64,000 bases of DNA, taken from positions 1-64,000 of the IMG/VR virus record IMGVR_UViG_3300036766_000194. The stretch is one strand, 5' to 3'. Shown piece by piece: positions 3,011 through 59,738 of this stretch. The notes under the pieces were generated by a model. That model was not told where the DNA came from and made no database searches. It saw only the letters and a program-made list of their open reading frames with translations. The first letter of the stretch is position 1. Every line of letters starts with the position of its first letter. A program made the translations under genes and the position numbers.

Positions 3011-3405
3011 CCGACTATTTCTTTCTGACTGAGCCGATTTTGACAACCTATATTGCGTGAAATTATGATTTTTGCTCGTTTAATAGCTTTTGGATTTTGA
3101 GTTATGGATTGAACAAAAGTCAGTAGTCGTTTACGACAAGTCGTGATGTTTTTCTTTTGAATTTCTCCTGCAAATATAGTCTCAAGAGCAGTTAATACGG
3201 CTTCCTCCGTTCCTCCCAATGCTTGAGTTCGTTTCTGAAGCAATTGAATTACAATGGCCCCATCACCACAAGTTGGCTCAAGTAATATAGCACTTACATC
3301 TCCCCAGATTTTGACAGGTAATTGGTTGAGAGCTAAGGATACCAATGGATCAGGACTAAATACTTCCCCGAATTTTCGTACTTGTTTTCGTTTCCCCTGT
3401 TTCAT
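3007..3405 (-). CDS. Second stand-alone SAM-binding methyltransferase half
   Basis: KFGEVFSP and LEPTCGDGAI motifs. Coupled to the stop of the upstream gene (TAAcATG). Confidence 0.75.
   Translation of the reverse strand: MKQGKRKQVRKFGEVFSPDPLVSLALNQLPVKIWGDVSAILLEPTCGDGAIVIQLLQKRTQALGGTEEAVLTALETIFAGEIQKKNITTCRKRLLTFVQSITQNPKAIKRAKIIISRNIGCQNRLSQKEIVG
3011..3035 (+). repeat. 25-bp direct repeat, copy 1
   Basis: ccgactatttctttctgactgagcc, identical to 5632-5656. Confidence 0.95.
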
Positions 3406-9570: not shown

Positions 9571-9641
9571 TGGGTCGTAGCTTAATGGTAGAGCAGCGGC
9601 GTTAAGCCGCTGGTGCGAGGTTCGACTCCTCGCCGACTGAA
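9571..9641 (+). pseudogene. Degenerate tRNA-Asn-derived gene (loop CGTTAAG)
   Basis: Good D and T arms. Anticodon loop lacks U33, acceptor stem is mismatched, no CCA. Confidence 0.65.
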
Positions 9642-9988: not shown

Positions 9989-10054
9989 GCGGGAGTAGCT
10001 CAACGGTAGAGCGCATCGTTGCCAACGATGATACGTCGGTCCAACACCGCTCCA
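9989..10054 (+). pseudogene. tRNA-Gly(GCC) with a deletion in the T-arm/acceptor junction
   Basis: Canonical 5' half and catcg-ttgccaa-cgatg arm, but only 66 nt with a collapsed T-arm. Confidence 0.75.
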
Positions 10055-28968: not shown

Positions 28969-29871
28969 ATGAGCAATCGTAAAACTCTTATTTGGGCTTA
29001 CAACATGGAGACAGGACGGCAGACCCGCGTAGCCAAAGTCTCGGACATTCTACTTCCGTGGGTTCCTGGCCGAGTTCCTCTAAGGAACACTAAGTGCAAC
29101 GACTGCGGGATTGAACTCTCTGACAGAAAATTGAGTCCTTGCTTGGACAAAGTTCTTCGCTGTAAGGATTGTGGAAGTTTCGTGTGGACTTTGAAGCAAT
29201 ACGGAATGACATTGGAGGATTTTCAAAAGCTGTCTGACAAACAGGGGAGCAAATGTGCCATCTGTAAAGAACTCCCTAAAGATGGTCAAAGGCTTTGCGT
29301 GGATCATGACCACAGCACAGGAAAGGTGCGTGGGTTGCTTTGCCGTTCTTGTAATCTCCTTCTCGGAAATTTGAAGGACAAATTGGCCAATGCACGCGCC
29401 GTTGTTTCCTACCTTTTGCGTCACGACGGACGTAGAAGTTGGGACCATTATTTCTTGGATATTGCAGAAGCGACAGCAACAAGAAGCAAGGATACCTCCG
29501 CCCAAGTCGGAGCTGTGCTGGTTAGAGATAGACAGGTGCTCGCAACGGGATATAATGGATTCCCGTCTGGTGTGAACGATGCTGTGCCAGAACGCCATGA
29601 ACGCCCCGCAAAATATATGTGGACTGTCCACGCCGAAGTGAATGCAATTTTGCAAGCAGGCAAACACGGTATTAGCACAGACAAAGCTACCCTGTATGTC
29701 AATCCGCTTTCACCGTGTTTGAATTGTGCCAAAGCTATAGTGCAAGCAGGAGTTAGAGAAGTCGTTTGCCCGAATCCGGGATCACTTGGGACTGGTGATG
29801 CTGCGGTTGAATTGGGAAAAGCTCTAGAGCTTCTGGCAGCAGCAAAGGTGCTAATTAGAAAACCCGATTAA
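28969..29871 (+). CDS. Endonuclease VII-like domain fused to dCMP deaminase
   Basis: CAIC...VDHDHSTGKVRGLLCRSCN, then WDHYFL..A...RSKD, GYNG, HAEVNAI, PCLNC. Confidence 0.9.
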   Translation: MSNRKTLIWAYNMETGRQTRVAKVSDILLPWVPGRVPLRNTKCNDCGIELSDRKLSPCLDKVLRCKDCGSFVWTLKQYGMTLEDFQKLSDKQGSKCAICKELPKDGQRLCVDHDHSTGKVRGLLCRSCNLLLGNLKDKLANARAVVSYLLRHDGRRSWDHYFLDIAEATATRSKDTSAQVGAVLVRDRQVLATGYNGFPSGVNDAVPERHERPAKYMWTVHAEVNAILQAGKHGISTDKATLYVNPLSPCLNCAKAIVQAGVREVVCPNPGSLGTGDAAVELGKALELLAAAKVLIRKPD

Positions 29872-30603: not shown

Positions 30604-31953
30604 GTGGCCGTGGACACAGAAACTGGTATGAAATTTTCTCCCAATAGGATTGATACCAACAAACCTCTCAAAGAGGGAGATAGAGTGACTGCGCCACTCG
30701 AAGTCATTAAGCAGTACGTGGAGAATCAGAAAATGTCTGACCAGAAGCGTGGCATAAAAGGACGAGTGTATTTGACACCAGAAGAGGTGTCTCCCGCTGC
30801 GCAAGCATTCGGCTGCGACCGCTTCGTCTATAACCACCTTTTGGAATTTGAGCAGAATAGGTATGCCACAGACCAGACCAAAACAAACAAGAAAGACAGG
30901 AACATCGAATTCAATCGTCTCAAGCAAGAATTTCCTTGGCTGTATGATGTCAACGCTCAGATGCTTCAGCAGTCCACGAGGAAACTGGATACAGCGTGGG
31001 ACAATTTCTTCGCCACCTGCAAAACAACGAAACATTGGAGACGCCCGAAGTTCAAAAAGAAAACGAACAGGCAGTCAGCACGGTTCACCAAAGGTTCATT
31101 CAAGTTCGAGAACGGCGTGCTCACCCTCTCCAAAATTGGAGACATCTCAATACCTTGGTATCGCCGAGTAAAAGGCGAGCCATCATCTGTCGTTCTTAGC
31201 ATGACGCCTTCGGGTCGATATTATGCGTCGTTTCAAGTCGAGCAGCCGTTGCGTGTAGTCGGCTCCGCAATCAATCAGGTTGCCTCAATTGACATCAACA
31301 CCAAGACTTTCAATTTCTTTAACGGCAGGACGTATTCGCATGTTGCTCTGCCCCGCCCGTTGCTCGGTGCTCTGTCGCGGCTCCGCACGGCACAGAAGCA
31401 CCTGAGCCGCTGCACCAAAGGCTCCAAGAATCGGGAGAAAGCCCGTCTCAAAGTCGCCAAGATTCACCAGCGGGTGTCAGACATCCGCACTGATTTTCTC
31501 CAGAAGTTAAGCACTCAACTTGTTCACGAGAACCAAGTGATAGTAGTTGAAACGCTTCGCACCAAGAACATGCTCAAGAATCGCCATCTGTCTCGTGCAA
31601 TTTCAGATGCAGGCTTCGGCGGCTTCCTCCGCATGTTGGAATACAAGTGCAAGTGGTATGGCAGAATGCTCGTCAAAGTAAACACGTTCTTCCCATCATC
31701 AAAGTTGTGCTGCATTTGTCGAGAGAAGAATGCAGACCTCAAACTCCAAGACCGCTGGCAGTGCCCGAATTGCAAGACGGAACACCAGCGAGACGAGAAT
31801 GCTGTCGTAAACATTTTCGTAGAGGGTTTGAGAATCTTAGCCGAGGGACGCTCGGTATCAGCCTGCGGAGGCACAGCAAGACCTAATCGCAAGATTAGGC
31901 GTGTGCCTGTGAAGCAGGAAACATCGTTGGAGACGAGCAGCAATGCTGCTTAG
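30604..31953 (+). CDS. tnpB: TnpB (IS200/IS605 RNA-guided nuclease) with N-terminal extension containing a TnpA tail
   Basis: FGCDRFVYN, P.FKKK, RuvC SID / VVETL / RDENA, Zn finger CCIC...CPNC. Typical TnpB body starts near ATG 30733. Confidence 0.92.
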   Translation: MAVDTETGMKFSPNRIDTNKPLKEGDRVTAPLEVIKQYVENQKMSDQKRGIKGRVYLTPEEVSPAAQAFGCDRFVYNHLLEFEQNRYATDQTKTNKKDRNIEFNRLKQEFPWLYDVNAQMLQQSTRKLDTAWDNFFATCKTTKHWRRPKFKKKTNRQSARFTKGSFKFENGVLTLSKIGDISIPWYRRVKGEPSSVVLSMTPSGRYYASFQVEQPLRVVGSAINQVASIDINTKTFNFFNGRTYSHVALPRPLLGALSRLRTAQKHLSRCTKGSKNREKARLKVAKIHQRVSDIRTDFLQKLSTQLVHENQVIVVETLRTKNMLKNRHLSRAISDAGFGGFLRMLEYKCKWYGRMLVKVNTFFPSSKLCCICREKNADLKLQDRWQCPNCKTEHQRDENAVVNIFVEGLRILAEGRSVSACGGTARPNRKIRRVPVKQETSLETSSNAA

Positions 31954-34015: not shown

Positions 34016-35032
34016 ATGACCTCTAATACGAATTCAAAAGTTGTAAAACTTCCTCATATAAATGTAAATTTTACCTTCATTTCCGATTCTCATCTTTCTG
34101 CTGTACCTCCAGGTACAAGAAGAAGAGATGATTATGCTACTGCCATTCTTAATAAATTTGAATTTGTTAGAGAATTAACCGAAAAAATTCAAGGCGTGTG
34201 CTTACATGGAGGTGATTTTTGGCATATAAAAACTCCTCGTTCCCCAGCCAATAATCTTTCCATAATTTGTCGTGCTATCCGTTGCCTATCAAAATTTCCT
34301 ACCGGATGTATCTATACCACCCCCGGAAATCACGATTTGAGTCATGATTCTTTAGGGAGTTTGCCCCATCAACCCTTAGGAATACTAATGGCTGCTGGTG
34401 TTTGTCACGATTTATCAGTTACGTCCGTAATCTTTGAAAACAGTGATGGTTCCGTCCGTGTTCAAGTGGAGGCTTTTTCTTATGCAGACGAATCTGTCAC
34501 CATGGCCCGATTACTTGCCAGTGGTCCTCGTATCCCCGGATGTTACCGGGTGGGTATTGTTCACTCCTACGGATCTCCCAAATCTCACAGTCTCTGGGGA
34601 ATTGACACCCTCGGATACGATCAACTCATGGACTTGGACTACGACTTTTTACTTTGGGGACACGACCATTCAAGAGAAGAAACCATAACTGTAGGAAATG
34701 TGACTCATGTGCGATTGGGATCACTTTCTAGGGCATCCCTATCTACCGATGAAGTAGACCGCCCGGTTAGCGCCGCTGTGATCTCATTCACGACAGAAGG
34801 CATCAAGTACCAGGAGCGTCGCATCCCGGTTAAGCCTCTGGAATTGGCGTTTGTTACAGCCGATCATAACCTCGCCAACGTTGCCAAACTAGATGAAATC
34901 ACGACATTCTTTTCAGACATGGATCAGGCCGTCTCCGGAATTGAGAGTACGGACCCAAGAAATATCATTCAGTCCTTGACCGCAGAAGACCCCGCACTAA
35001 CGCAGATGATATTTGAATTATGCGAACTGTAA
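34016..35032 (+). CDS. Mre11/SbcD-like DNA repair exonuclease
   Basis: ISDSH, HGGDFWH, PGNHD, GIVH, WGHDH, GSLSR. Confidence 0.85.
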   Translation: MTSNTNSKVVKLPHINVNFTFISDSHLSAVPPGTRRRDDYATAILNKFEFVRELTEKIQGVCLHGGDFWHIKTPRSPANNLSIICRAIRCLSKFPTGCIYTTPGNHDLSHDSLGSLPHQPLGILMAAGVCHDLSVTSVIFENSDGSVRVQVEAFSYADESVTMARLLASGPRIPGCYRVGIVHSYGSPKSHSLWGIDTLGYDQLMDLDYDFLLWGHDHSREETITVGNVTHVRLGSLSRASLSTDEVDRPVSAAVISFTTEGIKYQERRIPVKPLELAFVTADHNLANVAKLDEITTFFSDMDQAVSGIESTDPRNIIQSLTAEDPALTQMIFELCEL

Positions 35033-35191
35033 TACGGATGTCCTTACAGATCAATATCTTATCTATGTTTTGCGCGATCCCAGAACTGGAGAGCCGCGCT
35101 ATGTCGGTCAGAGTTCGCGAGGATTAGAACGACCTCAAGAGCATCGATTTTGAGGAGCGTGAATCAACATCTGAATAACTGGAGAAGGATT

Positions 35192-35785
35192 ATGAAGAAC
35201 ATCTGGTTCAATAGCGATCTTCATCTGTCACATGCTAATATCATAAAGTATTGCAAGCGTCCCTTTGTGCGCACTGAATTCCCCGAAGACGATAAGCGTC
35301 ATTGGGATTACGAAACCATGGATGAGACTCTAGTAAAGAATCACAATGAACTTGTCGGATCTGATGATGATGTTTACAATCTTGGCGACCTGACTTTCGG
35401 TCGTGATGCGAACGTTGATCGTGCACGTCAACTGCTACGCCGCATGAACGGTAGGCACCATTTCATCTTTGGCAATCATGATAAAATAGCCACCCAACTT
35501 TCAGACATGTTTGTGTGGATGAAACACTATCATGAGTTCAAACAAGGTGAAATCACCATAATCCTCTTTCATTATGCCCTCCGGACATGGAATCATCAAT
35601 TCAAAGGTTCCATGCATCTCTATGGTCATAGTCACGGCACCCTACCCGAGGACAAGTCTCTGTCCTTTGACGTCGGTGTTGATACTCATGATTTTCGTCC
35701 TTATCACTTAGATGACATTATTAAGAAGATGGAGCGTAAACGTCGTGACAACTCAACCGGATTACCACCAGGCGACAGCAAGTAA
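35192..35785 (+). CDS. Calcineurin-like metallophosphoesterase
   Basis: FNSDLHLSH, NLGD, FGNHD, HYA, YGHSH, DVGVD. Confidence 0.9.
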   Translation: MKNIWFNSDLHLSHANIIKYCKRPFVRTEFPEDDKRHWDYETMDETLVKNHNELVGSDDDVYNLGDLTFGRDANVDRARQLLRRMNGRHHFIFGNHDKIATQLSDMFVWMKHYHEFKQGEITIILFHYALRTWNHQFKGSMHLYGHSHGTLPEDKSLSFDVGVDTHDFRPYHLDDIIKKMERKRRDNSTGLPPGDSK

Positions 35786-37908: not shown

Positions 37909-38481
37909 TTACGGCGTAATAAGGTGGTACCACAAGGTAACTTTGACGCTTCCATCGCCGAGAGTAAAGTTCCCGTTGGAGGCGACAATGAAAACTCCTG
38001 CCCCAATGGTTGCGGCGTTGTACATCACGTTTCCCGAGGCTTGATTGTTGTTTGGGGAACCGAACCCAATGCTGCCCCCCGTGTTCACGGTCAAGTCAAT
38101 TGAGGCTTCGGCGTATGGACCAAAAGTAGCAGCGTTGTCCGTCTCGATTCCAAAAAACTGGCGTGCAGATGCACTTGCTGACGGAGTCGTATCGTATTGC
38201 AGGTTGAGTGTGTTGCCAGTGGCATTGCCGAAAGCGATGGGTCCGGGTCCAAGTTTGTACTGAGCGAGGCATCTCTCAACGAGGTAAAATTGTCCGGGAA
38301 CGGGCGGGAGACATTGCACAGACGTAGACAATGTTTTGAGTTGTGCCGATGACAAAGTCACGGAGATAGCAATTCCTCCTCCCGCATTATCAAGGATTTG
38401 TAGATTCTTGTTATCATCTAGATGTTCATCATCATTGTAAGCCGATAAAATCAGTCCAAGATTTTTTGTTGTATCAGGCAT
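37909..38481 (-). CDS. Putative virion/fibre protein
   Basis: MPDTTKNLGL...N.QILDNA start resembles fibre N-termini. Confidence 0.6.
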   Translation of the reverse strand: MPDTTKNLGLILSAYNDDEHLDDNKNLQILDNAGGGIAISVTLSSAQLKTLSTSVQCLPPVPGQFYLVERCLAQYKLGPGPIAFGNATGNTLNLQYDTTPSASASARQFFGIETDNAATFGPYAEASIDLTVNTGGSIGFGSPNNNQASGNVMYNAATIGAGVFIVASNGNFTLGDGSVKVTLWYHLITP

Positions 38482-38553
38482 ATAGTGTTCCTACCAAGAA
38501 GGAAATAGTTAGAATTTTAGCTAAAAATGTAGACTATCCAGTATAGTATAGAT

Positions 38554-38616
38554 ATGAGATACATGCGACCAAATTCGCCGTGCCCCAGTTTGCTGGGCAT
38601 CTATACCACCGATTAA
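38554..38616 (+). CDS. Putative leaderless 20-aa leader peptide ahead of the tRNA-Pro cluster
   Basis: ATG 14 nt after AGTATAGT. MRYMRPNSPCPSLLGIYTTD. Confidence 0.3.
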   Translation: MRYMRPNSPCPSLLGIYTTD

Positions 38617-38702
38617 CGCGGTATAGACACCCAGCGAGCCATCGTTTGGGTGTGTAGAAGTTCTTTCCGAGTAATAACCCCATACGATAATTAAGCGTCA
38701 CA

Positions 38703-38776
38703 CGGAGTGTACGTGGACGGACGACGGCAGGCGTCGGAAGCCTGAGCACCCGGTTCAATTCCGGGCACTCCGACCA
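38703..38776 (+). tRNA. tRNA-Pro(CGG)
   Basis: cggagtg/cactccg acceptor, caggc-gtcggaa-gcctg arm, CCA. Confidence 0.88.
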
Positions 38777-38782
38777 ATTTTT

Positions 38783-38861
38783 CGGGAAGTAGCGCAGCCT
38801 GGTCCAACGCGCCTGCTTTGGAAGCAGGAGGTCGTGGGTTCAAATCCCACCTTCCCGACCA
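38783..38861 (+). tRNA. tRNA-Pro(TGG)
   Basis: cctgc-tttggaa-gcagg arm, CCA. Confidence 0.95.
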
Positions 38862-38875
38862 AGTTTTTAGTTTTA

Positions 38876-38949
38876 CGGGGACAAGTGTTAAGGCCGCATA
38901 TATGCTTTGGGAGCATAGGGTCGGAGTTCAATTCTCCGGTCCCCGACCA
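38876..38949 (+). tRNA. tRNA-Pro(TGG), second divergent copy
   Basis: tatgc-tttggga-gcata arm, CCA. Confidence 0.88.
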
Positions 38950-39327
38950 GGAGCCGGAAGCCGTTGAAGAGTAAGCCTTGTAGAAGGCAACGGCAGGCTC
39001 CTCGTAATTTCTGTAGGGAGCAGCCGCCGTAAGGCGGAGGACGAGGCTGCAGTTGAAAGAGCCGTGGGGAAAGAGTGCCATTATCCTAACCCGTAAGGGA
39101 AGGACCTAAGTCCTGAGGGGAGCGTGGGTGAAACGCCTCCTGCTCACAGATTTTCGTTGTGGAAGATGCAGACCCCAACTTAATGGGGAGTCGGATTCGC
39201 ACAAGGAAAGATTCGGTCTAGTAGCCAAGTCTAACCGACCCAGGCGGATTTGCCGATAAACGGAGGAGCAGCTTTCCTGGAGCCTAGTGTTCCGTTGGAA
39301 GGTAAGACTTCACCGAACGCAACGGAA
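38950..39327 (+). ncRNA. Unassigned ~380-nt multi-domain structured RNA
   Basis: Consecutive closed domains: ggagcc/ggctcc, gcagcc/ggctgc, ttgtg/cacaa, ggaaag/ctttcc, ttccgttg/caacggaa. GNRA loops. Confidence 0.6.
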
Positions 39328-39331
39328 GTTT

Positions 39332-39409
39332 CGGGGACGTAGCGAAGCCTGTTATCGCGCACCCTTGGGGTGGGTGAGATCGCTGGTTAAAATCCAGTCG
39401 TCCCGACCA
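39332..39409 (+). tRNA. tRNA-Pro(GGG)
   Basis: caccc-ttggggt-gggtg arm, T-loop TTAAAAT, CCA. Confidence 0.9.
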
Positions 39410-39418
39410 AACTTGTCT

Positions 39419-40021
39419 GTGATATATCAAGTTTACCCCAGTTTATGTGATTGTGGCCTAAACTGGGGTAAACTTCGTATAGCCTTTTATAAATACGATG
39501 GTAGCAATCTACGCTGGGAGTGGGCACCCAAACGTGGCTGGTACAAGTATGGTACCCGGACGCAACTTTTTAATGAGACTGATCCGTTGTTCGGTCAGGC
39601 TATTCCCATATTCCAAGATACCATGGGAGCGGAAATAGCTCGTCGTTGTAAGGATGCCGAACGCGGAGTACAGAGAATTATTGTTTATACGGAATTCTTT
39701 GGACCTTCTAGCTTCGCCGGAGAGCATGAATTGGCGGAACCAAAGAAATTGAAGTTGTTTGACATTAAGTTGTACAAACGTGGAATAATGTCTCCGCGAC
39801 AGTTCGTAAAAACTTTTGGAGATTTGCCTTATTCAGCGCAAGTGACTTATGAAGGCAACCTTAACAAGCAATTTATTGATGATGTTCGTAAGGGAGTCTA
39901 TCCCGTTTGGGAAGGAGTCGTAGCCAAGGGGGATGATTTTATAATAAAGATAAAAACGGACATATACTTTAAAAAATTGAATGAAGTTTACGGAACCGAG
40001 TATAGGAACTATTGGGAATGA
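39419..40021 (+). CDS. ATP-dependent RNA ligase-like nucleotidyltransferase
   Basis: KYDGSN motif I, TEFFG, FDIK, EGVVAK, KIK. GTG start chosen so that YPS leads. Confidence 0.75.
   Translation: MIYQVYPSLCDCGLNWGKLRIAFYKYDGSNLRWEWAPKRGWYKYGTRTQLFNETDPLFGQAIPIFQDTMGAEIARRCKDAERGVQRIIVYTEFFGPSSFAGEHELAEPKKLKLFDIKLYKRGIMSPRQFVKTFGDLPYSAQVTYEGNLNKQFIDDVRKGVYPVWEGVVAKGDDFIIKIKTDIYFKKLNEVYGTEYRNYWE
39429..39475. repeat. 17-bp perfect inverted repeat at the start of the ligase gene
   Basis: aagtttaccccagttta / taaactggggtaaactt. Confidence 0.9.
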
Positions 40022-40081
40022 CTCAACGTGAGCGCATGAAGAATCGGTACCCTAAGAAGTTAGGCTTTGTAGTAAAGTAAT

Positions 40082-40158
40082 GGCTCTGTCGTATAATGGT
40101 CCAGTACGCCGCTCTCATAAAGCGGAGACGGTAGGTTCAATTCCTCCCAGAGCTACCA
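40082..40158 (+). tRNA. tRNA-Met or Ile2 (CAT)
   Basis: ccgct-ctcataa-agcgg arm, paired 1:72, CCA. Confidence 0.9.
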
Positions 40159-40177
40159 AAATTAAGTATCAAGTAGT

Positions 40178-40414
40178 ATGATCATAGAAGTGAAACCCTC
40201 TATAGGCCGTATCCCAGAATGGGGCGTCTTTATTGACGATGTTCTATTTGGGGTTAGTAAGCATAGTTGTGACGCGGATCTAGCTGCTTGGAAGTTACAG
40301 AGCATGTTTGCTGATGAGAAACCTGAAGTATTAAATCATCCTGAGAGAAGACAATTCCTTCTCCAGCAAATAGAAGAGATTAAAAAAGAAATAAAGAAAA
40401 CTACCCGAAAATAG
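40178..40414 (+). CDS. Hypothetical protein
   Basis: 78-aa ORF with no SD (probably leaderless). Confidence 0.6.
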   Translation: MIIEVKPSIGRIPEWGVFIDDVLFGVSKHSCDADLAAWKLQSMFADEKPEVLNHPERRQFLLQQIEEIKKEIKKTTRK

Positions 40415-40458
40415 AATTACAGGGTAGAATAAAAGAGCAGGAAAGAAGGAGAACATAG

Positions 40459-40611
40459 ATGCTCGTATTAAAAAGACCAATTAGGCCGTTGTGGCAGGCG
40501 CTGAGGTATCTAATTCCGCACCGTTTGACCATGTTTCATACGCCAACGATTTGGGCAATACTGTGGTGGAACTACTGGAATGAGCGAAAAGCTCTTTATC
40601 CACACAGTTAG
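40459..40611 (+). CDS. Small Trp-rich hypothetical protein (50 aa)
   Basis: RBS aaggag. Below the track cutoff. Confidence 0.5.
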   Translation: MLVLKRPIRPLWQALRYLIPHRLTMFHTPTIWAILWWNYWNERKALYPHS

Positions 40612-40655
40612 GGTTAGGGGAAGTTCAAGCTCAACTTGGACTTCCCGTATTAAAT

Positions 40656-40937
40656 TGCAGGGATAGGTATGGGGCGACAAAAGGGCAGCAAAACCATGCT
40701 GACTATAAATCGCCTGCCTTTTCGAGACGCCATAGCGCCTCGAAGGGAACCCAGCCTTTGATGGTTGGTCCTGCATGCGCACTTGAGCCGCTCTCCGGGA
40801 AGGCTCATGACGAAGAGAACTTCTTTCTTGAAGTTCTCTTCGACCCCGGTAAATTTTAAGGTGGCAGATCCGTCAAGATGTGAACGGCGACCGTTCCGGA
40901 TACTAATACCCAAAGGTCGAAAATCATGGGAGCCACC
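40656..40937 (+). ncRNA. Unassigned ~280-nt structured RNA
   Basis: tgcagg/cctgca, perfect 13-bp hairpin 40811-40842, ggtggc/gccacc. Preceded by CGTATTAA. Confidence 0.5.
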
Positions 40938-40944
40938 ATGAAAA

Positions 40945-41037
40945 TTGAACGTGCTGTGGTGTAATGGAGCACGCACGGTAGAATCCGTAATCCATCAGGG
41001 CTAAGAGGTCCCAGACGAGTCTGGGTAGCGCGTTCAA
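40945..41037 (+). ncRNA. tRNA-like RNA with an 11-bp closing stem
   Basis: ttgaacgtgct/agcgcgttcaa, D-arm-like gtggtgtaatggagcac, acgg/ccgt arm, cccaga/tctggg arm. Confidence 0.45.
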
Positions 41038-41067
41038 TACTTTTAAATAAAGAAATAGGAGACGACA

Positions 41068-41481
41068 GTGGCAAAAGCACAAAAATCGGCATTACCGAAG
41101 GGTGACAAGCCCGAGATTTCCAGAGAAGAGATGCTGCGTGTCGTCATTATGAACACGAAGCAGGGACTCTTTACCGGAAATGTTGACTATGTCAACGTTC
41201 TGGTGGAATCGTATGAAATGGAGAAGGATGCCGTCGCTACTCTTGCCCCGGCTTGTTCTGGACTGTTGAAGCGTGCCGAGACGGCGGAAGCAGAGGTTGC
41301 TTCTTTGAGGGAGGAAGTTCTCAACCTCCGTATGGAGGTCATGGGACTTCGGGCAGGTCTGAACAGCGGAATTGAAGCAGTCATGGAAAGGGTCGCTGCT
41401 CAAGAAGAGTCTCAGGACGGTATTGCAACTCCGGCTGGAGTAAGCGCATCGTTGAATGAGTGCGAAGCAACGGGATCTTGA
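41068..41481 (+). CDS. Coiled-coil hypothetical protein
   Basis: RBS aggag, GTG start. Confidence 0.7.
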   Translation: MAKAQKSALPKGDKPEISREEMLRVVIMNTKQGLFTGNVDYVNVLVESYEMEKDAVATLAPACSGLLKRAETAEAEVASLREEVLNLRMEVMGLRAGLNSGIEAVMERVAAQEESQDGIATPAGVSASLNECEATGS

Positions 41482-41517
41482 AAAGATTTGACTGAAAGTT
41501 ATTCAGTCTAAATGATT

Positions 41518-41891
41518 TGTGATGGACTGGACTGTCGCTGGCGACTGCTAGAATGAGTTGCGGGAGGAAGTTCGGGGCAGCATCAGAGCAACGTGCCAGG
41601 TAATAACTGGGCATCGGAGAAATCCGATGACGGAAAGTGGAACAGAAAATAACCGCCACGGCGCAAGCCGGGGTAAGGGTGCAAAGGTAGGGTAAGAGCC
41701 TACCAGCACGGCGGTAACGTCGTGGCTGCTAAACCCCACGTGCTGCAATGCCAAATAAGGATGGGATGATCTGCTCGATCGTTTTTCTCATCCGGGTAGG
41801 CAGCTTGAGATCATAGGTGACTATGATCCTAGACGAATGACAGTCACTCAGCATGGGCTGATGACAGAACCCCGGCTATAGGTTCATCACA
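41518..41891 (+). ncRNA. rnpB: RNase P RNA (bacterial type A-like)
   Basis: P1 tgtgatggac/gttcatcaca. P4 halves GAGGAAGTTCGGGG and ACAGAACCCCGGCTA. Also GAAAGTGGAACAGAAA, GGTAAGAGC, GCTAAACCC and AGACGAATG conserved segments. Confidence 0.93.
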
Positions 41892-41892
41892 A

Positions 41893-42036
41893 ATGAAAAA
41901 TAGTCACAAACGTGAGTCTAAACAATTGGGAATAAATGTCCAAACGGCAACCAATCGTTTGGTTAGAATGCTGCTGTTCAAATTCGCCCTCGAAACAAAG
42001 AGGGAGAATTGGAATAAATTCCCAACGATTTGCTGA
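41893..42036 (+). pseudogene. Truncated HNH endonuclease-type N-terminus
   Basis: SKQLGINVQTATNRLVRMLLFKF resembles the start of phage HNH genes. ORF stops at 47 aa before any HNH motif. Confidence 0.45.
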
Positions 42037-42188
42037 TTTCTCTAGGGTATTGAAGTAGAAGGCTGTGGTGCGTGGAGGAATTCCACGACGTTACTTACCA
42101 ACTCTCTGTAAACAGAGAAATTTGGGAGTGGCAGTGAATCACTTTTTACTTCAATGTTTTTAGTTTTAGCAGTATTAGTAGACTACAG

Positions 42189-42299
42189 CGCGGGGTGGAG
42201 CAGCCAGGTAGCTCGTTTGCCTCACGGAGAGGAATCCTAACGGGTTTCTCTTCGACCATAAGCAAAAGGTCGTCCGTTCAAATCGGACCCCCGCACCCA
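42189..42299 (+). tRNA. Initiator-type tRNA-fMet(CAT) interrupted by a 34-nt insert in the anticodon loop
   Basis: cgcggggtggagcagccaggtagctcg 5' half with C1:A72 mismatch. Removing 42223-42256 restores tttgc-ctcataa-gcaaa. CCA end. Confidence 0.9.
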
Positions 42300-42326
42300 G
42301 AATTACTAACGGGAGAAGTTTCCCAG

Positions 42327-42470
42327 TTATCCGTTCCGCTTAAACGGTTTGCAAGGGTGGGCAATCCACCCACGATTTTGTGGTGCTGAGACTCAGATCT
42401 ACACCTAATTGAGCAATCCCGAAAGGGTCGTTTGGAGAGACCGCTCTCCGTCGAGGCTCGAACGGGATAA
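42327..42470 (+). ncRNA. Unassigned ~145-nt multi-hairpin RNA upstream of the repeat protein
   Basis: ttatccgttc/gaacgggataa closing stem, gggtgg/ccaccc, ccc-GAAA-ggg, ggagag/ctctcc. Confidence 0.45.
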
Positions 42471-42493
42471 ATCGCCGCCGCGAAGGAGAAGCC

Positions 42494-42886
42494 ATGATGA
42501 CACATGCCGACTACGAAGCGCAACGCGCACTGCTCTATGACGACTACGAGGCGCAATGCGCACCGCTTTATGCCGACCACAAGGCGCAACTCGCACTGCT
42601 CGATGACGACCACTACGAAGCGAAACACGCACTCGATGACGACTACGAGACGCAACTCGCACTGCTCGATGACGACTACAAGGCGCAACGCGCACTCGAT
42701 GACGACTACGAGACGCAACTCGCACTGCTCGATGACGACTACGAAGCGAAACACGCACTGCTCTATGACGACTACAAGGCGCAACGCGCACCGATCGATG
42801 CCGACTACGAAGCGAAACGCGCACTGCTCGATGACGACTACGAGGCGCAACGATCAGTAATCGAAAATCCGTTCAAAGTTTCATGA
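42494..42886 (+). CDS. Acidic 11-aa (33-bp) tandem-repeat protein
   Basis: RBS aaggag. About 11 units of DYEAQRALLDD with point variants and 10/12-aa indel units. Confidence 0.8.
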   Translation: MMTHADYEAQRALLYDDYEAQCAPLYADHKAQLALLDDDHYEAKHALDDDYETQLALLDDDYKAQRALDDDYETQLALLDDDYEAKHALLYDDYKAQRAPIDADYEAKRALLDDDYEAQRSVIENPFKVS

Positions 42887-42924
42887 GTTTTGCTCCAAGC
42901 AGGGCGCACACGAGCCGATATTTG

Positions 42925-43002
42925 TGCGGGGATAGAGCAAAGGTAGCTCGGGAGTCTCATAAACTCCACGATGGCAGGTTTCGATACCGCCCCCCGCTAC
43001 CA
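42925..43002 (+). tRNA. Second fMet-like tRNA(CAT)
   Basis: ggagt-ctcataa-actcc arm, U1:U72 mismatch, irregular T-arm, CCA. Confidence 0.8.
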
Positions 43003-43005
43003 ATT

Positions 43006-43067
43006 TGTAGCGTAGCATGTGATGGGCAGGAACTTCACACCTGACTCTTTTTATGTGGGACGCTACA
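43006..43067 (+). ncRNA. ~62-nt extended hairpin
   Basis: tgtagcgt/acgctaca plus cagg/cctg. Confidence 0.35.
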
Positions 43068-43076
43068 AAACAGTTT

Positions 43077-43252
43077 GTAACGTGGTCCTTGTTGGTGTCC
43101 GTCGGAAAGCTGCCTGGCTTAACGGCCTTGCCTAAGATTTACTAGTAATCCCCGACGAGTAGACGATAAGGAAAGAGCGGCGGCTATGAGACCGTGCAGC
43201 GAATCTGGGGAAGCACAGGGCCAGGGAAATAAATGCTGGCATACCACGTTAC
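43077..43252 (+). ncRNA. 176-nt rod-like RNA, 6S RNA-like architecture
   Basis: Perfect 10-bp closing stem gtaacgtggt/accacgttac, central asymmetric bubble, inner cctggc/gccagg. Confidence 0.5.
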
Positions 43253-43261
43253 TTTAAGTTT

Positions 43262-43338
43262 GGTTCGAGTCGAGATTTCCGGCGCATTGGTTGGTGCGCA
43301 GTTAACCGGATGGGGAACACTGCAGCCCCCGCTCACCA
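43262..43338 (+). ncRNA. 77-nt tRNA-sized RNA ending in ACCA
   Basis: ggt..gag/ctc..acc closure, tccgg/ccgga and gggg/cccc arms, tRNA-type aagtttt trailer. Confidence 0.4.
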
Positions 43339-43358
43339 AAGTTTTTTAGGATAAACTA

Positions 43359-43499
43359 ATGTCCACTCGTTTGACCTGCCCACGTTGTAGCGCAATAGCA
43401 AAAGATACCAGTAAAGAGCGGAAGCGTTTTTTGCTCAGACACTCAGTCTCTGGCCCATGTATTACTCCGGGCAGGAAGATTGTTCTTGAGAGTAATTAA
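43359..43499 (+). CDS. Small CxxC peptide (46 aa)
   Basis: RBS agga. MSTRLTCPRC. Confidence 0.45.
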   Translation: MSTRLTCPRCSAIAKDTSKERKRFLLRHSVSGPCITPGRKIVLESN

Positions 43500-43528
43500 G
43501 GTCTTATATGTCGGCTGAGACCGAACAG

Positions 43529-43534
43529 TATAAT
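43529..43534 (+). promoter_or_regulatory. Consensus -10 box TATAAT
   Basis: 7-8 nt upstream of the structured RNA starting near 43542. Confidence 0.6.
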
Positions 43535-43541
43535 AAGTGGT

Positions 43542-43736
43542 GGAGCTATATCCAACGGGAAACCGTTGAATTTATGGTCCTGCGTAACCGTTCACGCATG
43601 TAGTAGAGAACGGATGGCTGGACTATACCCAGGGAGTTCCCGTACACTCTGAAATGAATGGTACGGGTGGAAGGGTTCCGTTCCCTGGTGATGATTTAGA
43701 GCGGAAGGTGGCGGGTTGCGGCAATAGCCGTGTCTC
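43542..43736 (+). ncRNA. Unassigned ~200-nt pseudoknotted RNA with its own promoter and terminator
   Basis: ggag/ctcc closure, caacgg-GAAA-ccgttg, tgcgt/acgca with loop ccgttc complementary to downstream gaacgg, ccaggga/tccctgg, cccgtac/gtacggg. Confidence 0.6.
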
Positions 43737-43741
43737 CAAGA

Positions 43742-43786
43742 AAGGGAGGAACTTGGTAGGTGTCTAGTTCCTCCCTTTTTCTTTTT
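43742..43786 (+). terminator. Rho-independent terminator
   Basis: aagggaggaact...agttcctcccttttt followed by ctttttt. Confidence 0.88.
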
Positions 43787-43792
43787 AGGATT

Positions 43793-43956
43793 TCTCGGTT
43801 GTGGCGGAAAAGACGATTAATAAATAAAGACGCACCGGACTTAACACTCCGGGATTCTACGAGCTTACTGGTTTATGAGACCATCCGTACCCCGTGAGGG
43901 ATCGGGCGTAGGATTCAAGTCCAGGGTGGAGAATCGGGAATCCCTGGCAATCGAGA
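43793..43956 (+). ncRNA. 164-nt expanded tRNA-Leu(TAA)-like RNA
   Basis: tctcggttg/caatcgaga acceptor, Leu-type D arm gcgg...agacgc with expanded loop, ccgga-cttaacac-tccgg (8-nt loop), branched variable arm, enlarged T-loop, no CCA. Confidence 0.7.
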
Positions 43957-44008
43957 ATAATTTTCAACTATAGACCTTCATACAGTCCAACAAAATTTTG
44001 GAGACTGT

Positions 44009-44296
44009 ATGCATAATAGAGAATGTTGTGGTTGTGAGAATGAAGTTCCTCAGCAGCAATGTAGTTGTAAATGTCATCGTCAATACGATTGTGAATATTG
44101 GGAGACTCTAGCATTTATTTGGATATGTGATGCTCCCGACGAATTCCGTCGTGAAGACGCCTGGCATAGATTTTGTCAAGCCTTCCCTGAATATGGGCAT
44201 GAAACTCATCATGAGTTTTGGAACCGTATTCTCCGCACTAAGTGGTATCATAAACAGGGACATCACCATCATCGAGGACATCAGCACGATTACTAA
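44009..44296 (+). CDS. Cys/His-rich small protein
   Basis: RBS ggag. CCGC...CSCKC and C-terminal GHHHHRGHQH. Confidence 0.65.
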   Translation: MHNRECCGCENEVPQQQCSCKCHRQYDCEYWETLAFIWICDAPDEFRREDAWHRFCQAFPEYGHETHHEFWNRILRTKWYHKQGHHHHRGHQHDY

Positions 44297-44339
44297 TTTC
44301 AACCCCATTACATAAGTTCTGCGCGATAAGAACACGGAG

Positions 44340-45410
44340 GTGGTAGAAATGCCAAGACCCCCTGTTCGCCAGAAGCTCAACCCCGCCGCTCGTTCAGATG
44401 AAACGAGAGAATTTGGGGAGAATTTACGAGCCAAAATAGTTGGACAAGATGAAGGTGTTAAAGCACTTACGGACATCTACCAGGTATTCTGCGCTGGACT
44501 TAACTCACCAAATCGTCCTGTGGGAAATTTCCTATTCCTCGGTCCTACGGGTTCTGGTAAAACACGCATAGTAGAAGCTGCGGCTGAAATACTCTTTGGG
44601 GATCCTCGTGCGGTTATAAAAGTAGACTGCGCGGAATTCCAACACTCTCACGAAATTGCAAAATTAATCGGTTCTCCTCCAGGGTACCTAGGACATAAGG
44701 AGACTCATCCTCTTATCACGCAAGAAGCACTAGCTCAATATCATAAAGATGAGTTAAAATTATCCTTTCTTCTTTTTGATGAAATAGAAAAGGCTAGTGA
44801 CTCCCTGTGGCAATTGTTACTAGGAGTAATGGATAAAGCCACCTTGACTTTAGGAGACAACCGTAGAGTGGATCTTTCTGGTACCATAATATTTCTAACT
44901 TCAAATCTAGGTGGAGGAAGAATCTCTGAACTTATGAATGGTGGCATGGGATTTGTTCAATCGTCTGATACTAACCTGGACAATAAAATAGACTCCGCTG
45001 CTGTAGACGCGGCTAGACGAAATTTTTCTCCTGAGTTTATGAATCGTCTTGATAGAGTGGTCGTATTTCATCCACTAACTCGCATACAACTAGATGATAT
45101 TCTTAGTATTGAATTGGATCATGTACAACAAAGAATATTGGGCACGGCCAAGGGGCAATTCTTGTTACAAGTCACCCGGTCCGCCCGTGATCTTATTTTG
45201 AGAGAAGGTACTGACAGCCGCTTTGGGGCTAGACATTTAAAGAGAGCTATTGAACGTCTCTTAGTTCATTCCATAGCAAACCTCTTGTCCACTGAACAAT
45301 TAAAAGCAGGAGATGTTCTCTGTATAGATTGGGATCGTAAAAGTGATGATTTATTTTTTACACGTGAGGAACATAACGTATTAGTCAATCCAGAACAGCA
45401 TGATTTCTAA
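44340..45410 (+). CDS. ClpA/ClpB-type AAA+ ATPase, D2 domain only
   Basis: IVGQD, FLFLGPTGSGKT, KLIGSPPGYLG, LFDEIEKA, FLTSNLG, PEFMNRLD, GARHLKRAI. Confidence 0.9.
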   Translation: MVEMPRPPVRQKLNPAARSDETREFGENLRAKIVGQDEGVKALTDIYQVFCAGLNSPNRPVGNFLFLGPTGSGKTRIVEAAAEILFGDPRAVIKVDCAEFQHSHEIAKLIGSPPGYLGHKETHPLITQEALAQYHKDELKLSFLLFDEIEKASDSLWQLLLGVMDKATLTLGDNRRVDLSGTIIFLTSNLGGGRISELMNGGMGFVQSSDTNLDNKIDSAAVDAARRNFSPEFMNRLDRVVVFHPLTRIQLDDILSIELDHVQQRILGTAKGQFLLQVTRSARDLILREGTDSRFGARHLKRAIERLLVHSIANLLSTEQLKAGDVLCIDWDRKSDDLFFTREEHNVLVNPEQHDF

Positions 45411-59541: not shown

Positions 59542-59697
59542 AAATCATAGATCTATCAGGACAACAATAAAGGCTACACAAAAGAAAACTGCACTGTTTG
59601 CTGTAAAACTTGCAACTATGCCAAAGGGAATCGTTATACCTTTGAAGAATGGGTTGCAATGACAAAAGCACTTCGAAAAGTAAGATCCAAGTTTTGA
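59538..59697 (+). pseudogene. Internally deleted HNH endonuclease remnant
   Basis: MKIIDLSGQ start joined out of frame to DNNKGYTKENCTVCCKTCNYAKG. Confidence 0.65.
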
Positions 59698-59738
59698 GCA
59701 GTATAAAGGAAGTCAGGATTTCAGGACCTTTGCAAATC

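What the first reader, a model, noticed from the sequence alone, without database searches (positions are those of the whole stretch)
42189..42299. Initiator tRNA with a 34-nt hairpin mini-intron splitting the anticodon
Seen: precise removal of 42223-42256 restores a 77-nt tRNA-fMet with loop CUCAUAA. The insert folds into a 13-bp hairpin (42225-42254, UAAC loop). The CA duplication makes the junction ambiguous among 33/34, 34/35 and 35/36. Established: bacterial tRNA-fMet introns at 33/34 are self-splicing group I introns of roughly 200 nt or more, and archaeal short introns need a bulge-helix-bulge, which I cannot form here. Inference: a protein-spliced intron type handled by a nuclease plus the phage RNA ligase, or a stored or decoy form shielded from anticodon nucleases such as VapC.
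Basis: partly seen in the sequence, partly recalled or inferred. Interest (0 to 1): 0.8.

Follow-up and report, generated by a model that had tools for sequence, protein, structure and literature searches.

The report
Hairpin mini-intron in phage initiator tRNA
A giant phage carries an initiator-type methionine tRNA gene whose anticodon is split by a 34-base hairpin, and similar interrupted genes recur in other giant phages, so this looks like a maintained but mechanistically unexplained small tRNA intron rather than a chance defect.

Summary
Window 42189-42299 is an initiator-type tRNA (C1xA72, A11:U24, encoded CCA) carrying a 34-nt insert: a 13-bp hairpin plus ACCA. The window is a 300-kb IMG/VR phage contig.

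- **Recurrence:** collection scans found ten distinct interrupted initiator tRNA genes in phage tRNA clusters, forming six sequence families, with unrelated 21-34-nt hairpin inserts. All restore CAU. Only junction 35/36 fits all of them.
- **Intronless counterparts:** these exist, and one has exactly the window's joined anticodon arm.
- **Selection:** in the best-sampled family the hairpin covaries. Exons are 86-90% identical against 40-48% for the insert, and presence is patchy on protein trees.
- **Homing endonuclease:** an I-Ssp6803I-type gene lies 7-8 nt downstream of the interrupted gene in two relatives, but not in the window.
- **Excluded:** group I, bulge-helix-bulge, dispersed repeat, and tRNA-Val(CAC).
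- **Neighbours:** an ATP-dependent RNA ligase (structure-confirmed) and a phage RNase P RNA lie 2.2 kb and 0.3 kb upstream.

Best reading: an enzyme-spliced mini-intron, probably maintained through homing-endonuclease conflict. "Enigmatic" tRNA introns in Lak megaphages are the precedent.

The parts
42189..42224 (+). 5' exon: tRNA positions 1-35 (acceptor 5' strand, D arm, anticodon stem 5' strand UUUGC, C32 U33 C34 A35)
   Evidence: Direct reading; ARAGORN -i cloverleaf; 5' half 89-92% identical to initiator tRNAs of other phages
42225..42258 (+). 34-nt intervening sequence under the 35/36 junction: 13-bp hairpin 42225-42254 (loop UAAC, three G.U pairs) plus single-stranded ACCA 42255-42258. 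Equally possible by sequence alone: 42223-42256 or 42224-42257.
   Evidence: Folds; single copy; the 35/36 junction is inferred from the other interrupted genes
42259..42299 (+). 3' exon: U36 A37 A38, anticodon stem 3' strand GCAAA, variable loop AGGUC, T arm, acceptor 3' strand, C73, CCA
   Evidence: Direct reading; the joined arm UUUGC-CUCAUAA-GCAAA is found uninterrupted in L137/L138/L139
41519..41894 (+). Phage-encoded RNase P RNA (bacterial class A), 294 nt upstream of the interrupted tRNA
   Evidence: Rfam RF00010, 255 bits, full length; homologues lie next to the interrupted tRNA in L002 and L006, but also in intronless relatives
39413..40021 (+). Minimal ATP-dependent RNA ligase of about 200 aa. 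The ORF call starts at 39287 and overlaps tRNA-Pro, so the true start is probably near 39413.
   Evidence: Ligase motifs KxDG, TEFxG, EGVVxK and KIKT are conserved. PHROG 548 'RNA ligase' E 7e-6. Pfam PF09414 in 7 of 27 homologues. AlphaFold model pLDDT 89; best PDB matches are T. brucei REL1, T4 Rnl1, T4 Rnl2 and Naegleria Rnl.
40082..40158 (+). Uninterrupted tRNA(CAU) with a paired 1:72, so elongator Met or Ile2 type, not an initiator
   Evidence: ARAGORN and Rfam
42926..42998 (+). Second uninterrupted tRNA(CAU) with G1-C72, so not an initiator. The interrupted gene is the only initiator-type tRNA in the window.
   Evidence: ARAGORN
35150..35785 (+). Phosphoesterase (context only; a possible RNA end-healing enzyme)
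   Evidence: PHROG 547, E 1e-44; the neighbouring ORF 34016-35032 is Metallophos

Best explanation
The locus is a phage-encoded initiator-type tRNA-Met(CAU) gene. Its anticodon is split, most likely between A35 and U36, by a 34-nt intervening sequence made of a 13-bp RNA hairpin and an ACCA tail. It belongs to a recurrent set of interrupted initiator tRNA genes in the tRNA clusters of very large phages. I conclude that the insert is a maintained intron, not a dead insertion, and that it is too small and of the wrong shape to self-splice or to be a bulge-helix-bulge intron.

Proposed mechanism (inferred):
- The pre-tRNA folds as a cloverleaf whose anticodon stem continues, across an internal loop, into the intron hairpin.
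- An endonuclease that reads the tRNA body cuts both strands of that loop. Its identity is unknown and it could be host or phage encoded.
- The anticodon loop is resealed by the ATP-dependent RNA ligase that this phage group keeps inside its tRNA clusters. That ligase requires 3'-OH and 5'-phosphate ends.

Why the insert sits there (inferred by analogy with relatives): it splits the near-palindromic anticodon-arm DNA. That is the kind of site recognised by I-Ssp6803I-type PD-(D/E)XK homing endonucleases, which populate phage tRNA clusters. The insert would therefore persist as endonuclease immunity and spread or be lost like a mobile intron.

Shown: the gene, the hairpin, the series of homologues, intronless alleles, covariation, exon conservation, patchy distribution, the ligase fold, and endonuclease adjacency in two relatives.
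Inferred: splicing itself, the exact junction, the enzymes involved, and the endonuclease's target.
For: (1) Ten distinct interrupted initiator-like tRNA genes sit in phage tRNA clusters: window (=L044), L002, L119, L006, L034, L010, L031, L032, L041. Their inserts are 21-34 nt, unrelated in sequence between families, and each contains a hairpin. Each restores a 7-nt loop with CAU when one contiguous segment is removed.
(2) Intronless counterparts exist. L137-139 carry exactly UUUGC-CUCAUAA-GCAAA. L121, L124 and L129 carry UUCAUAC where L002, L119, L006 and L034 are interrupted.
(3) In that family the hairpin keeps pairing through double changes (A-U to G-C, U-A to C-G). The 3' tail AAGGA is invariant. 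Exons are 86-90% identical against 40-48% for the insert, on a protein background of 43-77% identity.
(4) The window hairpin has three G.U pairs, so it pairs only in the sense-strand RNA.
(5) Interrupted and intronless genes are interleaved on four protein trees.
(6) A PF11645 endonuclease (E 1e-29; matches PDB 2ost) starts 7-8 nt after the interrupted tRNA in L119 and L006, and a remnant survives in L002. Its relatives all sit inside phage tRNA clusters.
(7) The ligase is conserved next to tRNA clusters in 63 phage loci and is structurally an RNA ligase.
(8) Precedent: unexplained introns in Lak megaphage tRNAs (PMC6784885).
Against:
- No candidate endonuclease gene is shared by interrupted loci across clades within 10 kb either side.
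- The window has no PD-(D/E)XK endonuclease homologue in its 64 kb, so the immunity argument rests on relatives.
- The ligase and the RNase P RNA are equally present in intronless relatives. They are not specific to introns and may serve ordinary tRNA repair and processing.
- The window's only close relative (L044) is nearly identical, so the window's own hairpin has no covariation support.
- The internal-loop geometry differs between members, and two tRNA-Asn introns sit at other or non-identical positions. A single ruler rule is therefore unproven.
- The anticodon stem lacks the three G:C pairs typical of initiators.
Confidence: 0.5

Rival explanations
1. Unspliced scar: the insert is a target-site-disrupting insertion, for example filler from repair of a homing-endonuclease break. 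It protects the DNA from cleavage but leaves a non-functional tRNA gene, which is tolerated because the host supplies initiator tRNA.
For: The endonuclease gene is adjacent in L119 and L006. No splicing enzyme was identified. Window and L044 are too similar to show selection. The patchy distribution can arise by recombination alone.
Against: In the L002 family the exons stay 86-90% identical, with compensatory T-stem changes, while the insert diverges to 40-48%. The hairpin covaries and a 5-nt tail is invariant. All 20 stem pairs of the window tRNA are intact. The G.U pairs indicate an RNA-level hairpin.
Confidence: 0.2
2. RNase P-dependent 'minihelix' intron. The window insert (13-bp helix plus 3' ACCA) mimics the acceptor/T-stem minihelix with the CCA end of this phage's own tRNAs. 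The phage RNase P would cut at its 5' base, exactly after A35. A 3' processing activity would cut after CCA. The resulting 3'-OH and 5'-P ends would be sealed directly by the ATP-dependent ligase.
For: - The hairpin starts at the first intron nucleotide under the independently inferred 35/36 junction, and ACCA follows it immediately.
- 11 of the window's 17 tRNA genes end in ACCA.
- RNase P RNA lies 294 nt upstream, and also next to the interrupted gene in L002 and L006.
- The L083 tRNA-Asn intron and the Lak phage introns contain acceptor-plus-T-arm-like elements.
- The end chemistry matches the ligase type. The properties of RNase P minihelix substrates are from my own knowledge.
Against: - Other members have 5-9-bp hairpins and no CCA.
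- The hairpin base coincides with an allowed junction in only about 4 of 9 genes (my reading).
- RNase P RNA is present in intronless relatives and absent from the 20-kb loci that hold the tRNA-Asn introns.
- The CA of ACCA may simply be the anticodon, so only AC would be free (chance about 1/16).
- No known enzyme is established to cut precisely after an internal CCA here.
Confidence: 0.12
3. A functional unspliced tRNA-like RNA: a decoy or sponge for anticodon nucleases, MetRS or formyltransferase, or a stored inactive form.
For: The tRNA body is conserved. Phage tRNAs are known to evade anticodon nucleases (PMC10264068, listed).
Against: Every member keeps C34 A35 and U36 A37 A/C38 exactly, so that one excision restores a canonical loop. 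A decoy does not need this. Hairpin sequence and length vary freely. Nothing in the window points to a cognate nuclease.
Confidence: 0.08
4. tRNA-Val(CAC) with an intron one base 3' of the anticodon, as ARAGORN calls it. It would complete the window's Val(UAC) and Val(GAC) set, or act as a GUG-reading initiator.
For: ARAGORN -i call. The window already has two other tRNA(CAU) genes and Val UAC/GAC genes.
Against: The body is of initiator type (C1xA72, A11:U24). The identical anticodon arm with CAU exists uninterrupted in L137-139. All other interrupted members give CAU. No BHB forms for this junction either.
Confidence: 0.03
5. A self-splicing (group I-like) intron or an archaeal-type BHB intron.
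For: Known tRNA-fMet introns in cyanobacteria are group I (PMC1995217).
Against: The insert is 34 nt against 655 nt for the Synechocystis intron. There is no Rfam hit at E<=1. A35 rather than U precedes the common junction. No BHB forms in any register.
Confidence: 0.02

Closest known systems
'Enigmatic' tRNA introns of Lak megaphages (Devoto et al. 2019, PMC6784885)
   Same: Inserts in the anticodon loop of tRNA genes in huge-phage tRNA clusters. Presence or absence varies between related phages, boundaries are defined by alignment with intronless alleles, there is no Rfam match, and the mechanism is unknown.
   Different: The Lak introns are 79-93 nt, sit just 3' of the anticodon in elongator tRNAs (Tyr, Phe, Gly, Thr) and contain tRNA-like acceptor plus T-arm elements. 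Here the insert is a 21-34-nt simple hairpin inside the anticodon of initiator-type tRNAs, with a homing endonuclease gene adjacent in some relatives.
Cyanobacterial tRNA-fMet group I intron encoding I-Ssp6803I
   Same: The same gene type and the same region (anticodon loop) are interrupted. An endonuclease of the same PD-(D/E)XK family (PF11645, PDB 2ost) is associated.
   Different: That intron is a 655-nt self-splicing ribozyme with the endonuclease gene inside it. Here the insert is 34 nt with no ribozyme, the endonuclease gene is free-standing downstream (in relatives only), and the junction follows A35, not a U.
Collaborative homing: a free-standing homing endonuclease plus an ORF-less intron at its target site (reviewed in PMC3984707)
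   Same: An endonuclease gene lies next to an interrupted gene, the insert lies where an endonuclease of that family is known to cut, and the distribution among relatives is patchy.
   Different: The described cases use self-splicing group I introns. Here the interrupting element cannot self-splice, and the endonuclease's target has not been tested.
Archaeal/eukaryal protein-spliced tRNA introns (EndA/Sen endonuclease plus RtcB or Trl1)
   Same: A short intron in the anticodon loop that depends on protein enzymes. Recognition may be through the mature tRNA domain.
   Different: No bulge-helix-bulge forms. The position is inside the anticodon, not 37/38. The neighbouring ligase is of the 3'-OH/5'-P type, whereas those endonucleases leave a 2',3'-cyclic phosphate and a 5'-OH (own knowledge). 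No EndA-like gene was seen.
Phage T4 anticodon-loop repair (PrrC cut, then Pnkp and Rnl1)
   Same: A phage ATP-dependent RNA ligase reseals a broken tRNA anticodon loop. The window's ligase model matches T4 Rnl1 and Rnl2, and phosphoesterases lie nearby.
   Different: T4 repairs damage to an uninterrupted tRNA and removes no intervening sequence.

Membership tests
Bacterial initiator tRNA (tRNA-fMet) | Unpaired 1:72 (C1xA72) | tested here: met
   C42189 faces A42295. 1:72 is unpaired in 6 of 7 genes of the L002 family.
Bacterial initiator tRNA (tRNA-fMet) | Purine11:pyrimidine24 (A11:U24) | tested here: met
   D stem GAGC/GCUC gives A11:U24. That this is a defining feature is from my own knowledge.
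Bacterial initiator tRNA (tRNA-fMet) | Three consecutive G:C pairs 29-31:39-41 in the anticodon stem | tested here: not met
   The stem is UUUGC/GCAAA, so only G30:C40 and C31:G39 qualify. The intronless L137-139 have the same stem.
Bacterial initiator tRNA (tRNA-fMet) | Anticodon CAU in a 7-nt loop | tested here: inconclusive
   Present only after removal of 34 nt. Removal was not observed because no RNA data were available.
Group I intron | Conserved ribozyme core (P3-P8) of roughly 200 nt or more | tested here: not met
   The insert is 34 nt and there is no Rfam match at E<=1 in 38000-44500.
Group I intron | U at the end of the 5' exon | tested here: inconclusive
   U33 would fit a 33/34 junction, but the junction common to all members follows A35.
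Archaeal-type BHB tRNA intron | Two 3-nt bulges separated by a 4-bp helix that hold both splice sites | tested here: not met
   Brute-force test of all four junctions, both orientations and both cut registers gave at most 3 of 4 central pairs, never with both outer helices.
Archaeal-type BHB tRNA intron | EndA-type splicing endonuclease encoded or available | not testable with these tools
   None was found among the scanned ORFs of the window. However, 236 kb of the phage and the host are unseen.
Huge-phage tRNA introns (Lak type) | Insert in the anticodon loop of a tRNA within a huge-phage tRNA cluster | tested here: met
   300-kb viral contig with 17 tRNA genes in the window.
Huge-phage tRNA introns (Lak type) | Related phages carry the same tRNA without the insert, with precise boundaries | tested here: met
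   L137-139 for the window's arm; L121, L124 and L129 for the L002 family.
Huge-phage tRNA introns (Lak type) | Removal from the RNA | not testable with these tools
Removal is not shown in the Lak paper either, as far as I read it.
Collaborative homing / endonuclease-immunity insert | Free-standing homing endonuclease gene adjacent to the interrupted gene | tested here: not met
   No PF11645 homologue in the window (tblastn E<=1) and no endonuclease domain in the neighbouring ORFs. The feature is met in relatives L119 and L006, with a remnant in L002.
Collaborative homing / endonuclease-immunity insert | The endonuclease cuts the uninterrupted allele at the insertion site | not testable with these tools
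   This needs a cleavage assay. Only family membership with I-Ssp6803I is shown.
Dispersed palindromic repeat (REP/MITE-like) | Multiple related copies in the genome | tested here: not met
   Single copy in the window and in the relatives' loci.

The most novel reading that the evidence does not exclude
Huge phages may carry a previously unrecognised class of tRNA introns that are excised by the tRNA end-processing machinery. The intron would present itself as a tRNA-like minihelix; in the window this is a 13-bp helix ending in ACCA. The phage's own RNase P would cut at its 5' base, inside the anticodon, and a 3'-end activity would cut after the tail. The phage's minimal ATP-dependent RNA ligase would then join the 3'-OH and 5'-P ends. 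That would be a third route to tRNA splicing, alongside group I self-splicing and BHB endonuclease pathways, and it would explain why these phages encode RNase P RNA.
Probability: 0.12. Interest if true: 0.85.

Novelty: new variant of a known kind. Interest (0 to 1): 0.6.

Why it matters
Bacterial and phage tRNA introns are textbook group I ribozymes. Short, enzyme-dependent tRNA introns are considered an archaeal and eukaryotic trait.

A recurrent, selected 21-34-nt hairpin inside the anticodon of phage initiator tRNAs therefore implies one of two things. Either an unknown splicing activity operates in infected bacteria, or phage genes are kept in a deliberately interrupted state because of homing-endonuclease conflict.

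The system is small and fully specified: a 111-nt transcript, a 200-aa ligase and a 376-nt RNase P RNA. That makes the open question raised in 2019 by the Lak megaphage introns directly testable in vitro.

It also matters for annotation. Standard tRNA finders miss these genes, or call the wrong anticodon (Val instead of Met).

Tried and rejected
- **Known phages:** blastn of 41400-43100 against GenBank phages found no match.
- **Pattern error:** my first wide pattern had one N too many before the T loop and missed the window itself. It was corrected.
- **False positives:** most pattern hits were ordinary tRNAs or partial tandem duplications.
- **Rfam:** nothing matched the insert or its flanks.
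- **Dispersed repeat:** rejected.
- **BHB:** rejected.
- **RNase P RNA as an intron-specific partner:** rejected as a correlation. It is present in intronless relatives and absent from seven 20-kb loci, including both tRNA-Asn intron loci.
- **Shared endonuclease gene:** the search for a protein family shared only by interrupted loci found none across clades.
- **Neighbouring ORFs:** Pfam, PHROG and NCBIfam scans of ORFs next to the interrupted genes in the window, L010, L032 and L041 gave nothing.
- **Ligase by sequence against PDB:** these searches gave only spurious barstar hits or nothing. The structure search settled the question.
- **L044:** too close to the window to be informative.
- **Kink-turn:** I considered by eye a kink-turn in the internal loop and found no consistent tandem G.A arrangement. 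This was not a tool test.
- **Papers not held:** Zhao et al. 2007 and Paquin et al. 1997. The exact cleavage site of I-Ssp6803I and the position of the group I intron therefore remain unverified here.

Full report
**1. What is at the coordinates**

The window is part of IMG/VR contig IMGVR_UViG_3300036766_000194, which is 299,875 bp. Its gene content is that of a very large phage:
- two 5-hmdU DNA kinase paralogues, a RecA-like protein and intein-bearing helicases;
- a TnpB gene, an EndoVII-deaminase fusion and a glycosyltransferase cluster;
- 17 tRNA genes and a full-length class A RNase P RNA.

Read directly, 42189-42224 and 42259-42299 together form a 77-nt tRNA with perfect stems. It has C1 opposite A72, A11:U24, variable loop AGGUC, T loop UUCAAAU, C73 and an encoded CCA.

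Between A35 and U36 lie 34 nt. These form a 13-bp hairpin (42225-42254, loop UAAC, three G.U pairs) followed by ACCA. The hairpin is the minimum-energy structure, at -18.6 kcal/mol and z = -4.4. It occurs once in the window.

Standard ARAGORN and Rfam do not report the gene at all.

**2. It is not unique**

I scanned the collections for an initiator-type D arm and variable/T region separated by an over-long anticodon arm: viral contigs, metagenome contigs and genome contigs. I then ran ARAGORN on 63 phage loci related through a neighbouring protein.

After discarding ordinary tRNAs and partial duplications, ten distinct interrupted genes remain. All are initiator-like, with 1:72 mismatched or U:A, and all lie in phage tRNA clusters:
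- the window, and its near-identical relative L044;
- L002 (=L118), L119, L006 and L034, which form one family;
- L010 (next to a terminase gene), L031, L032 and L041.

Their inserts are 21-34 nt and unrelated in sequence between families. Each contains a hairpin. In every case one contiguous excision restores C/U-U-C-A-U-A-A/C.

The junctions allowed by sequence differ between genes:
- 33/34 to 35/36 in the window;
- 34/35 or 35/36 in the L002 family;
- 34/35 to 36/37 in L032;
- 35/36 or 36/37 in L041;
- 34/35 to 38/39 in L010 and L031.

The only junction common to all is 35/36, inside the anticodon between A and U. This is an inference. It assumes one rule applies to all members.

**3. Intronless counterparts and the anticodon identity**

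A scan for the window's 5' half found an uninterrupted phage tRNA (L137-139) whose anticodon arm is exactly UUUGC-CUCAUAA-GCAAA. That is the window's two exon ends joined.

Relatives of the L002 family (L121, L124, L129) carry the uninterrupted loop UUCAUAC where L002, L119, L006 and L034 have 25-26 extra bases. Other relatives of the window phage (L091, L097/L098, L099) have ordinary intronless initiator tRNAs.

This settles the Met(CAU) reading against Val(CAC).

**4. Evidence for selection**

In the L002 family the two subfamilies have hairpins of different sequence, but pairing is kept through double changes: A-U to G-C and U-A to C-G. Further pair-preserving changes occur within each subfamily. 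The 3' tail AAGGA and the flanking loop bases are invariant.

Exons are 86-90% identical between subfamilies, with compensatory T-stem changes. The insert is 40-48% identical. Neighbouring proteins are only 43-77% identical. The interrupted gene has therefore stayed under tRNA-type constraint while carrying the insert, and the insert is constrained as an RNA hairpin plus tail.

The window's three G.U pairs make the same point for the sense-strand RNA. L044 is too close to the window to add anything.

**5. Mobile-element behaviour and a homing endonuclease**

On four protein trees the interrupted loci are not monophyletic. L118 and L119 group with the intronless L124, and L006 groups with the intronless L121.

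Seven to eight nucleotides downstream of the interrupted tRNA, L119 encodes a 131-aa PD-(D/E)XK endonuclease (Pfam PF11645, E 1e-29). It matches PDB 2ost, which I recall as the I-Ssp6803I structure. The family is that of I-Ssp6803I, the homing endonuclease of the cyanobacterial tRNA-fMet group I intron. That enzyme recognises a 23-bp pseudo-palindromic target (PMC3384342 and PMC1995217).

The state of this gene varies among relatives:
- L006 has the same gene with an in-frame TGA.
- L002 retains an 18-codon remnant.
- The two copies are 79-85% identical, above every other shared protein.
- Relatives of this endonuclease in IMG/VR all sit inside phage tRNA clusters, directly after a tRNA gene.

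This is the pattern of collaborative homing (PMC3984707). A free-standing endonuclease targets a conserved site, and an insert at that site confers immunity. The window has no such gene in its 64 kb, so for the window this part rests on analogy.

**6. How might it be removed?**

Self-splicing is excluded by size and by the absence of any ribozyme match. A bulge-helix-bulge cannot form in any register, because both junctions face each other across one internal loop.

A roughly 200-aa protein encoded 2.2 kb upstream is conserved beside the tRNA clusters of 63 huge-phage loci. It carries the ligase motifs and hits PHROG 'RNA ligase' and Pfam PF09414. Its AlphaFold model (pLDDT 89) matches RNA ligases first: T. 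brucei REL1, T4 Rnl1, T4 Rnl2 and Naegleria Rnl. Such ligases join 3'-OH to 5'-phosphate (own knowledge).

RNase P RNA lies 294 nt upstream, and also next to the interrupted gene in L002 and L006. However, both the ligase and the RNase P RNA are equally present in intronless relatives. RNase P RNA was not found in seven further 20-kb loci. No endonuclease family is shared specifically by interrupted loci. The nuclease step therefore remains unknown.

One striking detail concerns the window. Under the 35/36 junction the intron is exactly a 13-bp helix plus ACCA, and ACCA is the 3' end of 11 of this phage's 17 tRNAs. That makes it look like an RNase P minihelix substrate. The L083 tRNA-Asn intron and the Lak introns also contain acceptor-plus-T-arm-like parts. 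Most other members do not fit this picture, so I keep it as the minority, most novel reading.

**7. Comparison with what is known**

Devoto et al. 2019 (PMC6784885) reported 'enigmatic introns' in Lak megaphage tRNAs and suggested that they may be common in large phage genomes. Those introns are 79-93 nt and sit 3' of the anticodon in elongator tRNAs.

Three text searches found nothing on short hairpin introns in phage initiator tRNAs. Two searches found nothing on phage-encoded RNase P RNA. Two huge-phage surveys do not mention either.

I therefore rate this a new variant of a known but unexplained kind.

**8. Verdict**

The feature is real, recurrent and under selection. It is most likely an enzyme-spliced mini-intron whose position reflects homing-endonuclease conflict (confidence 0.5).

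Noticed in passing
window 41519-41894 (+); also L002:5164-5495, L006:3672-4015, L119, L120-L122, L124, L125, L129, L130: Full-length bacterial class A RNase P RNA is encoded by huge phages next to their tRNA clusters (Rfam 255-304 bits; nhmmer hits in about 10 related loci). I found no mention of phage-encoded RNase P RNA in the papers searched.
   Followed up: partly
L083:561-686 and L107:3130-3236: Two tRNA-Asn(GUU) genes in related phages carry inserts. L083 has 50 nt at a unique 35/36 junction, containing an acceptor-like stem and a T-arm-like hairpin with loop UUCAAAU. L107 has 32 nt at 33/34 or 34/35, with a 10-bp hairpin.
   Followed up: partly
L116 (=L117): 1868-1995, 2006-2136, 2146-2280, 3612-3744: Four tRNA-like genes of about 130 nt in one phage share a conserved element of about 56 nt after the D arm. 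It includes a covarying hairpin (GUUCGG-GCAA-CCGAAC, GUUCAC-GCAA-GUGAAC, GUUCGC-UUCG-GUGAAC) and the motif AUGGUUAUC. It has no Rfam family and may be a mobile structured insert family.
   Followed up: partly
L031:548-656: Directly after the interrupted initiator tRNA lies a second tRNA-like gene (Rfam tRNA, 43.9 bits). It has a 37-nt insert of two tetraloop hairpins in the D loop and an odd anticodon loop, CGUAAAG.
   Followed up: no
genome loci L048, L051, L052, L057, L058, L062, L065-L067, L069-L071, L073, L074; metagenome loci L029, L037-L039, L042, L043: Marine Gammaproteobacteria (Shewanella, Neptuniibacter, Nitrincola, Catenovulum, Saccharospirillum) carry tRNA-fMet-like genes, often in tandem. 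Their anticodon arm is 27-35 nt (TCGGGCTCA...CGA) with a longer stem and no CAU. Some lack a matching 5' acceptor strand. This is a different phenomenon from the phage inserts.
   Followed up: no
window 9571-9641 (+) and 9995-10052 (+): There is a 71-nt tRNA with anticodon UUA (an ochre-suppressor type) and an imperfect acceptor stem, and a partial tRNA-like Rfam match (model positions 7-64). Relatives carry a CUA-anticodon tRNA (L086:4764-4841) and a permuted tmRNA (L107:20331-20548).
   Followed up: no
window 15166-17934 (+) and 59649-63917 (+): Two helicase genes (one DEAD/ResIII-type, one SNF2-type) are interrupted by inteins with LAGLIDADG homing endonuclease domains. This shows the genome is heavily colonised by homing elements.
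   Followed up: no
window 42494-42886 (+): The ORF immediately downstream of the tRNA consists of 66-nt tandem repeats (peptide repeats of the type DDDYEAQ.ALL). The repeat region and a 28-nt indel at 42427 are the main differences from the near-identical contig L044.
   Followed up: partly
window 40160-41068 and 43000-44340: Two stretches of 0.9 and 1.3 kb flanking the RNase P/tRNA region have no ORF over 100 aa, no Rfam match, and no nucleotide similarity to related loci.
   Followed up: partly
window 2126-3046 (-), 5720-6646 (+), 28969-29871 (+), 30604-31953 (+): There are two 5-hmdU DNA kinase paralogues, which suggests hypermodified thymidine in the phage DNA. There is also an Endonuclease VII-dCMP deaminase fusion and a TnpB (IS605 OrfB) gene.
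   Followed up: no
L006:330-725: The I-Ssp6803I-like endonuclease gene has a single in-frame TGA where its L119 homologue has a glycine codon. This is either a decaying gene or a recoded stop.
   Followed up: partly
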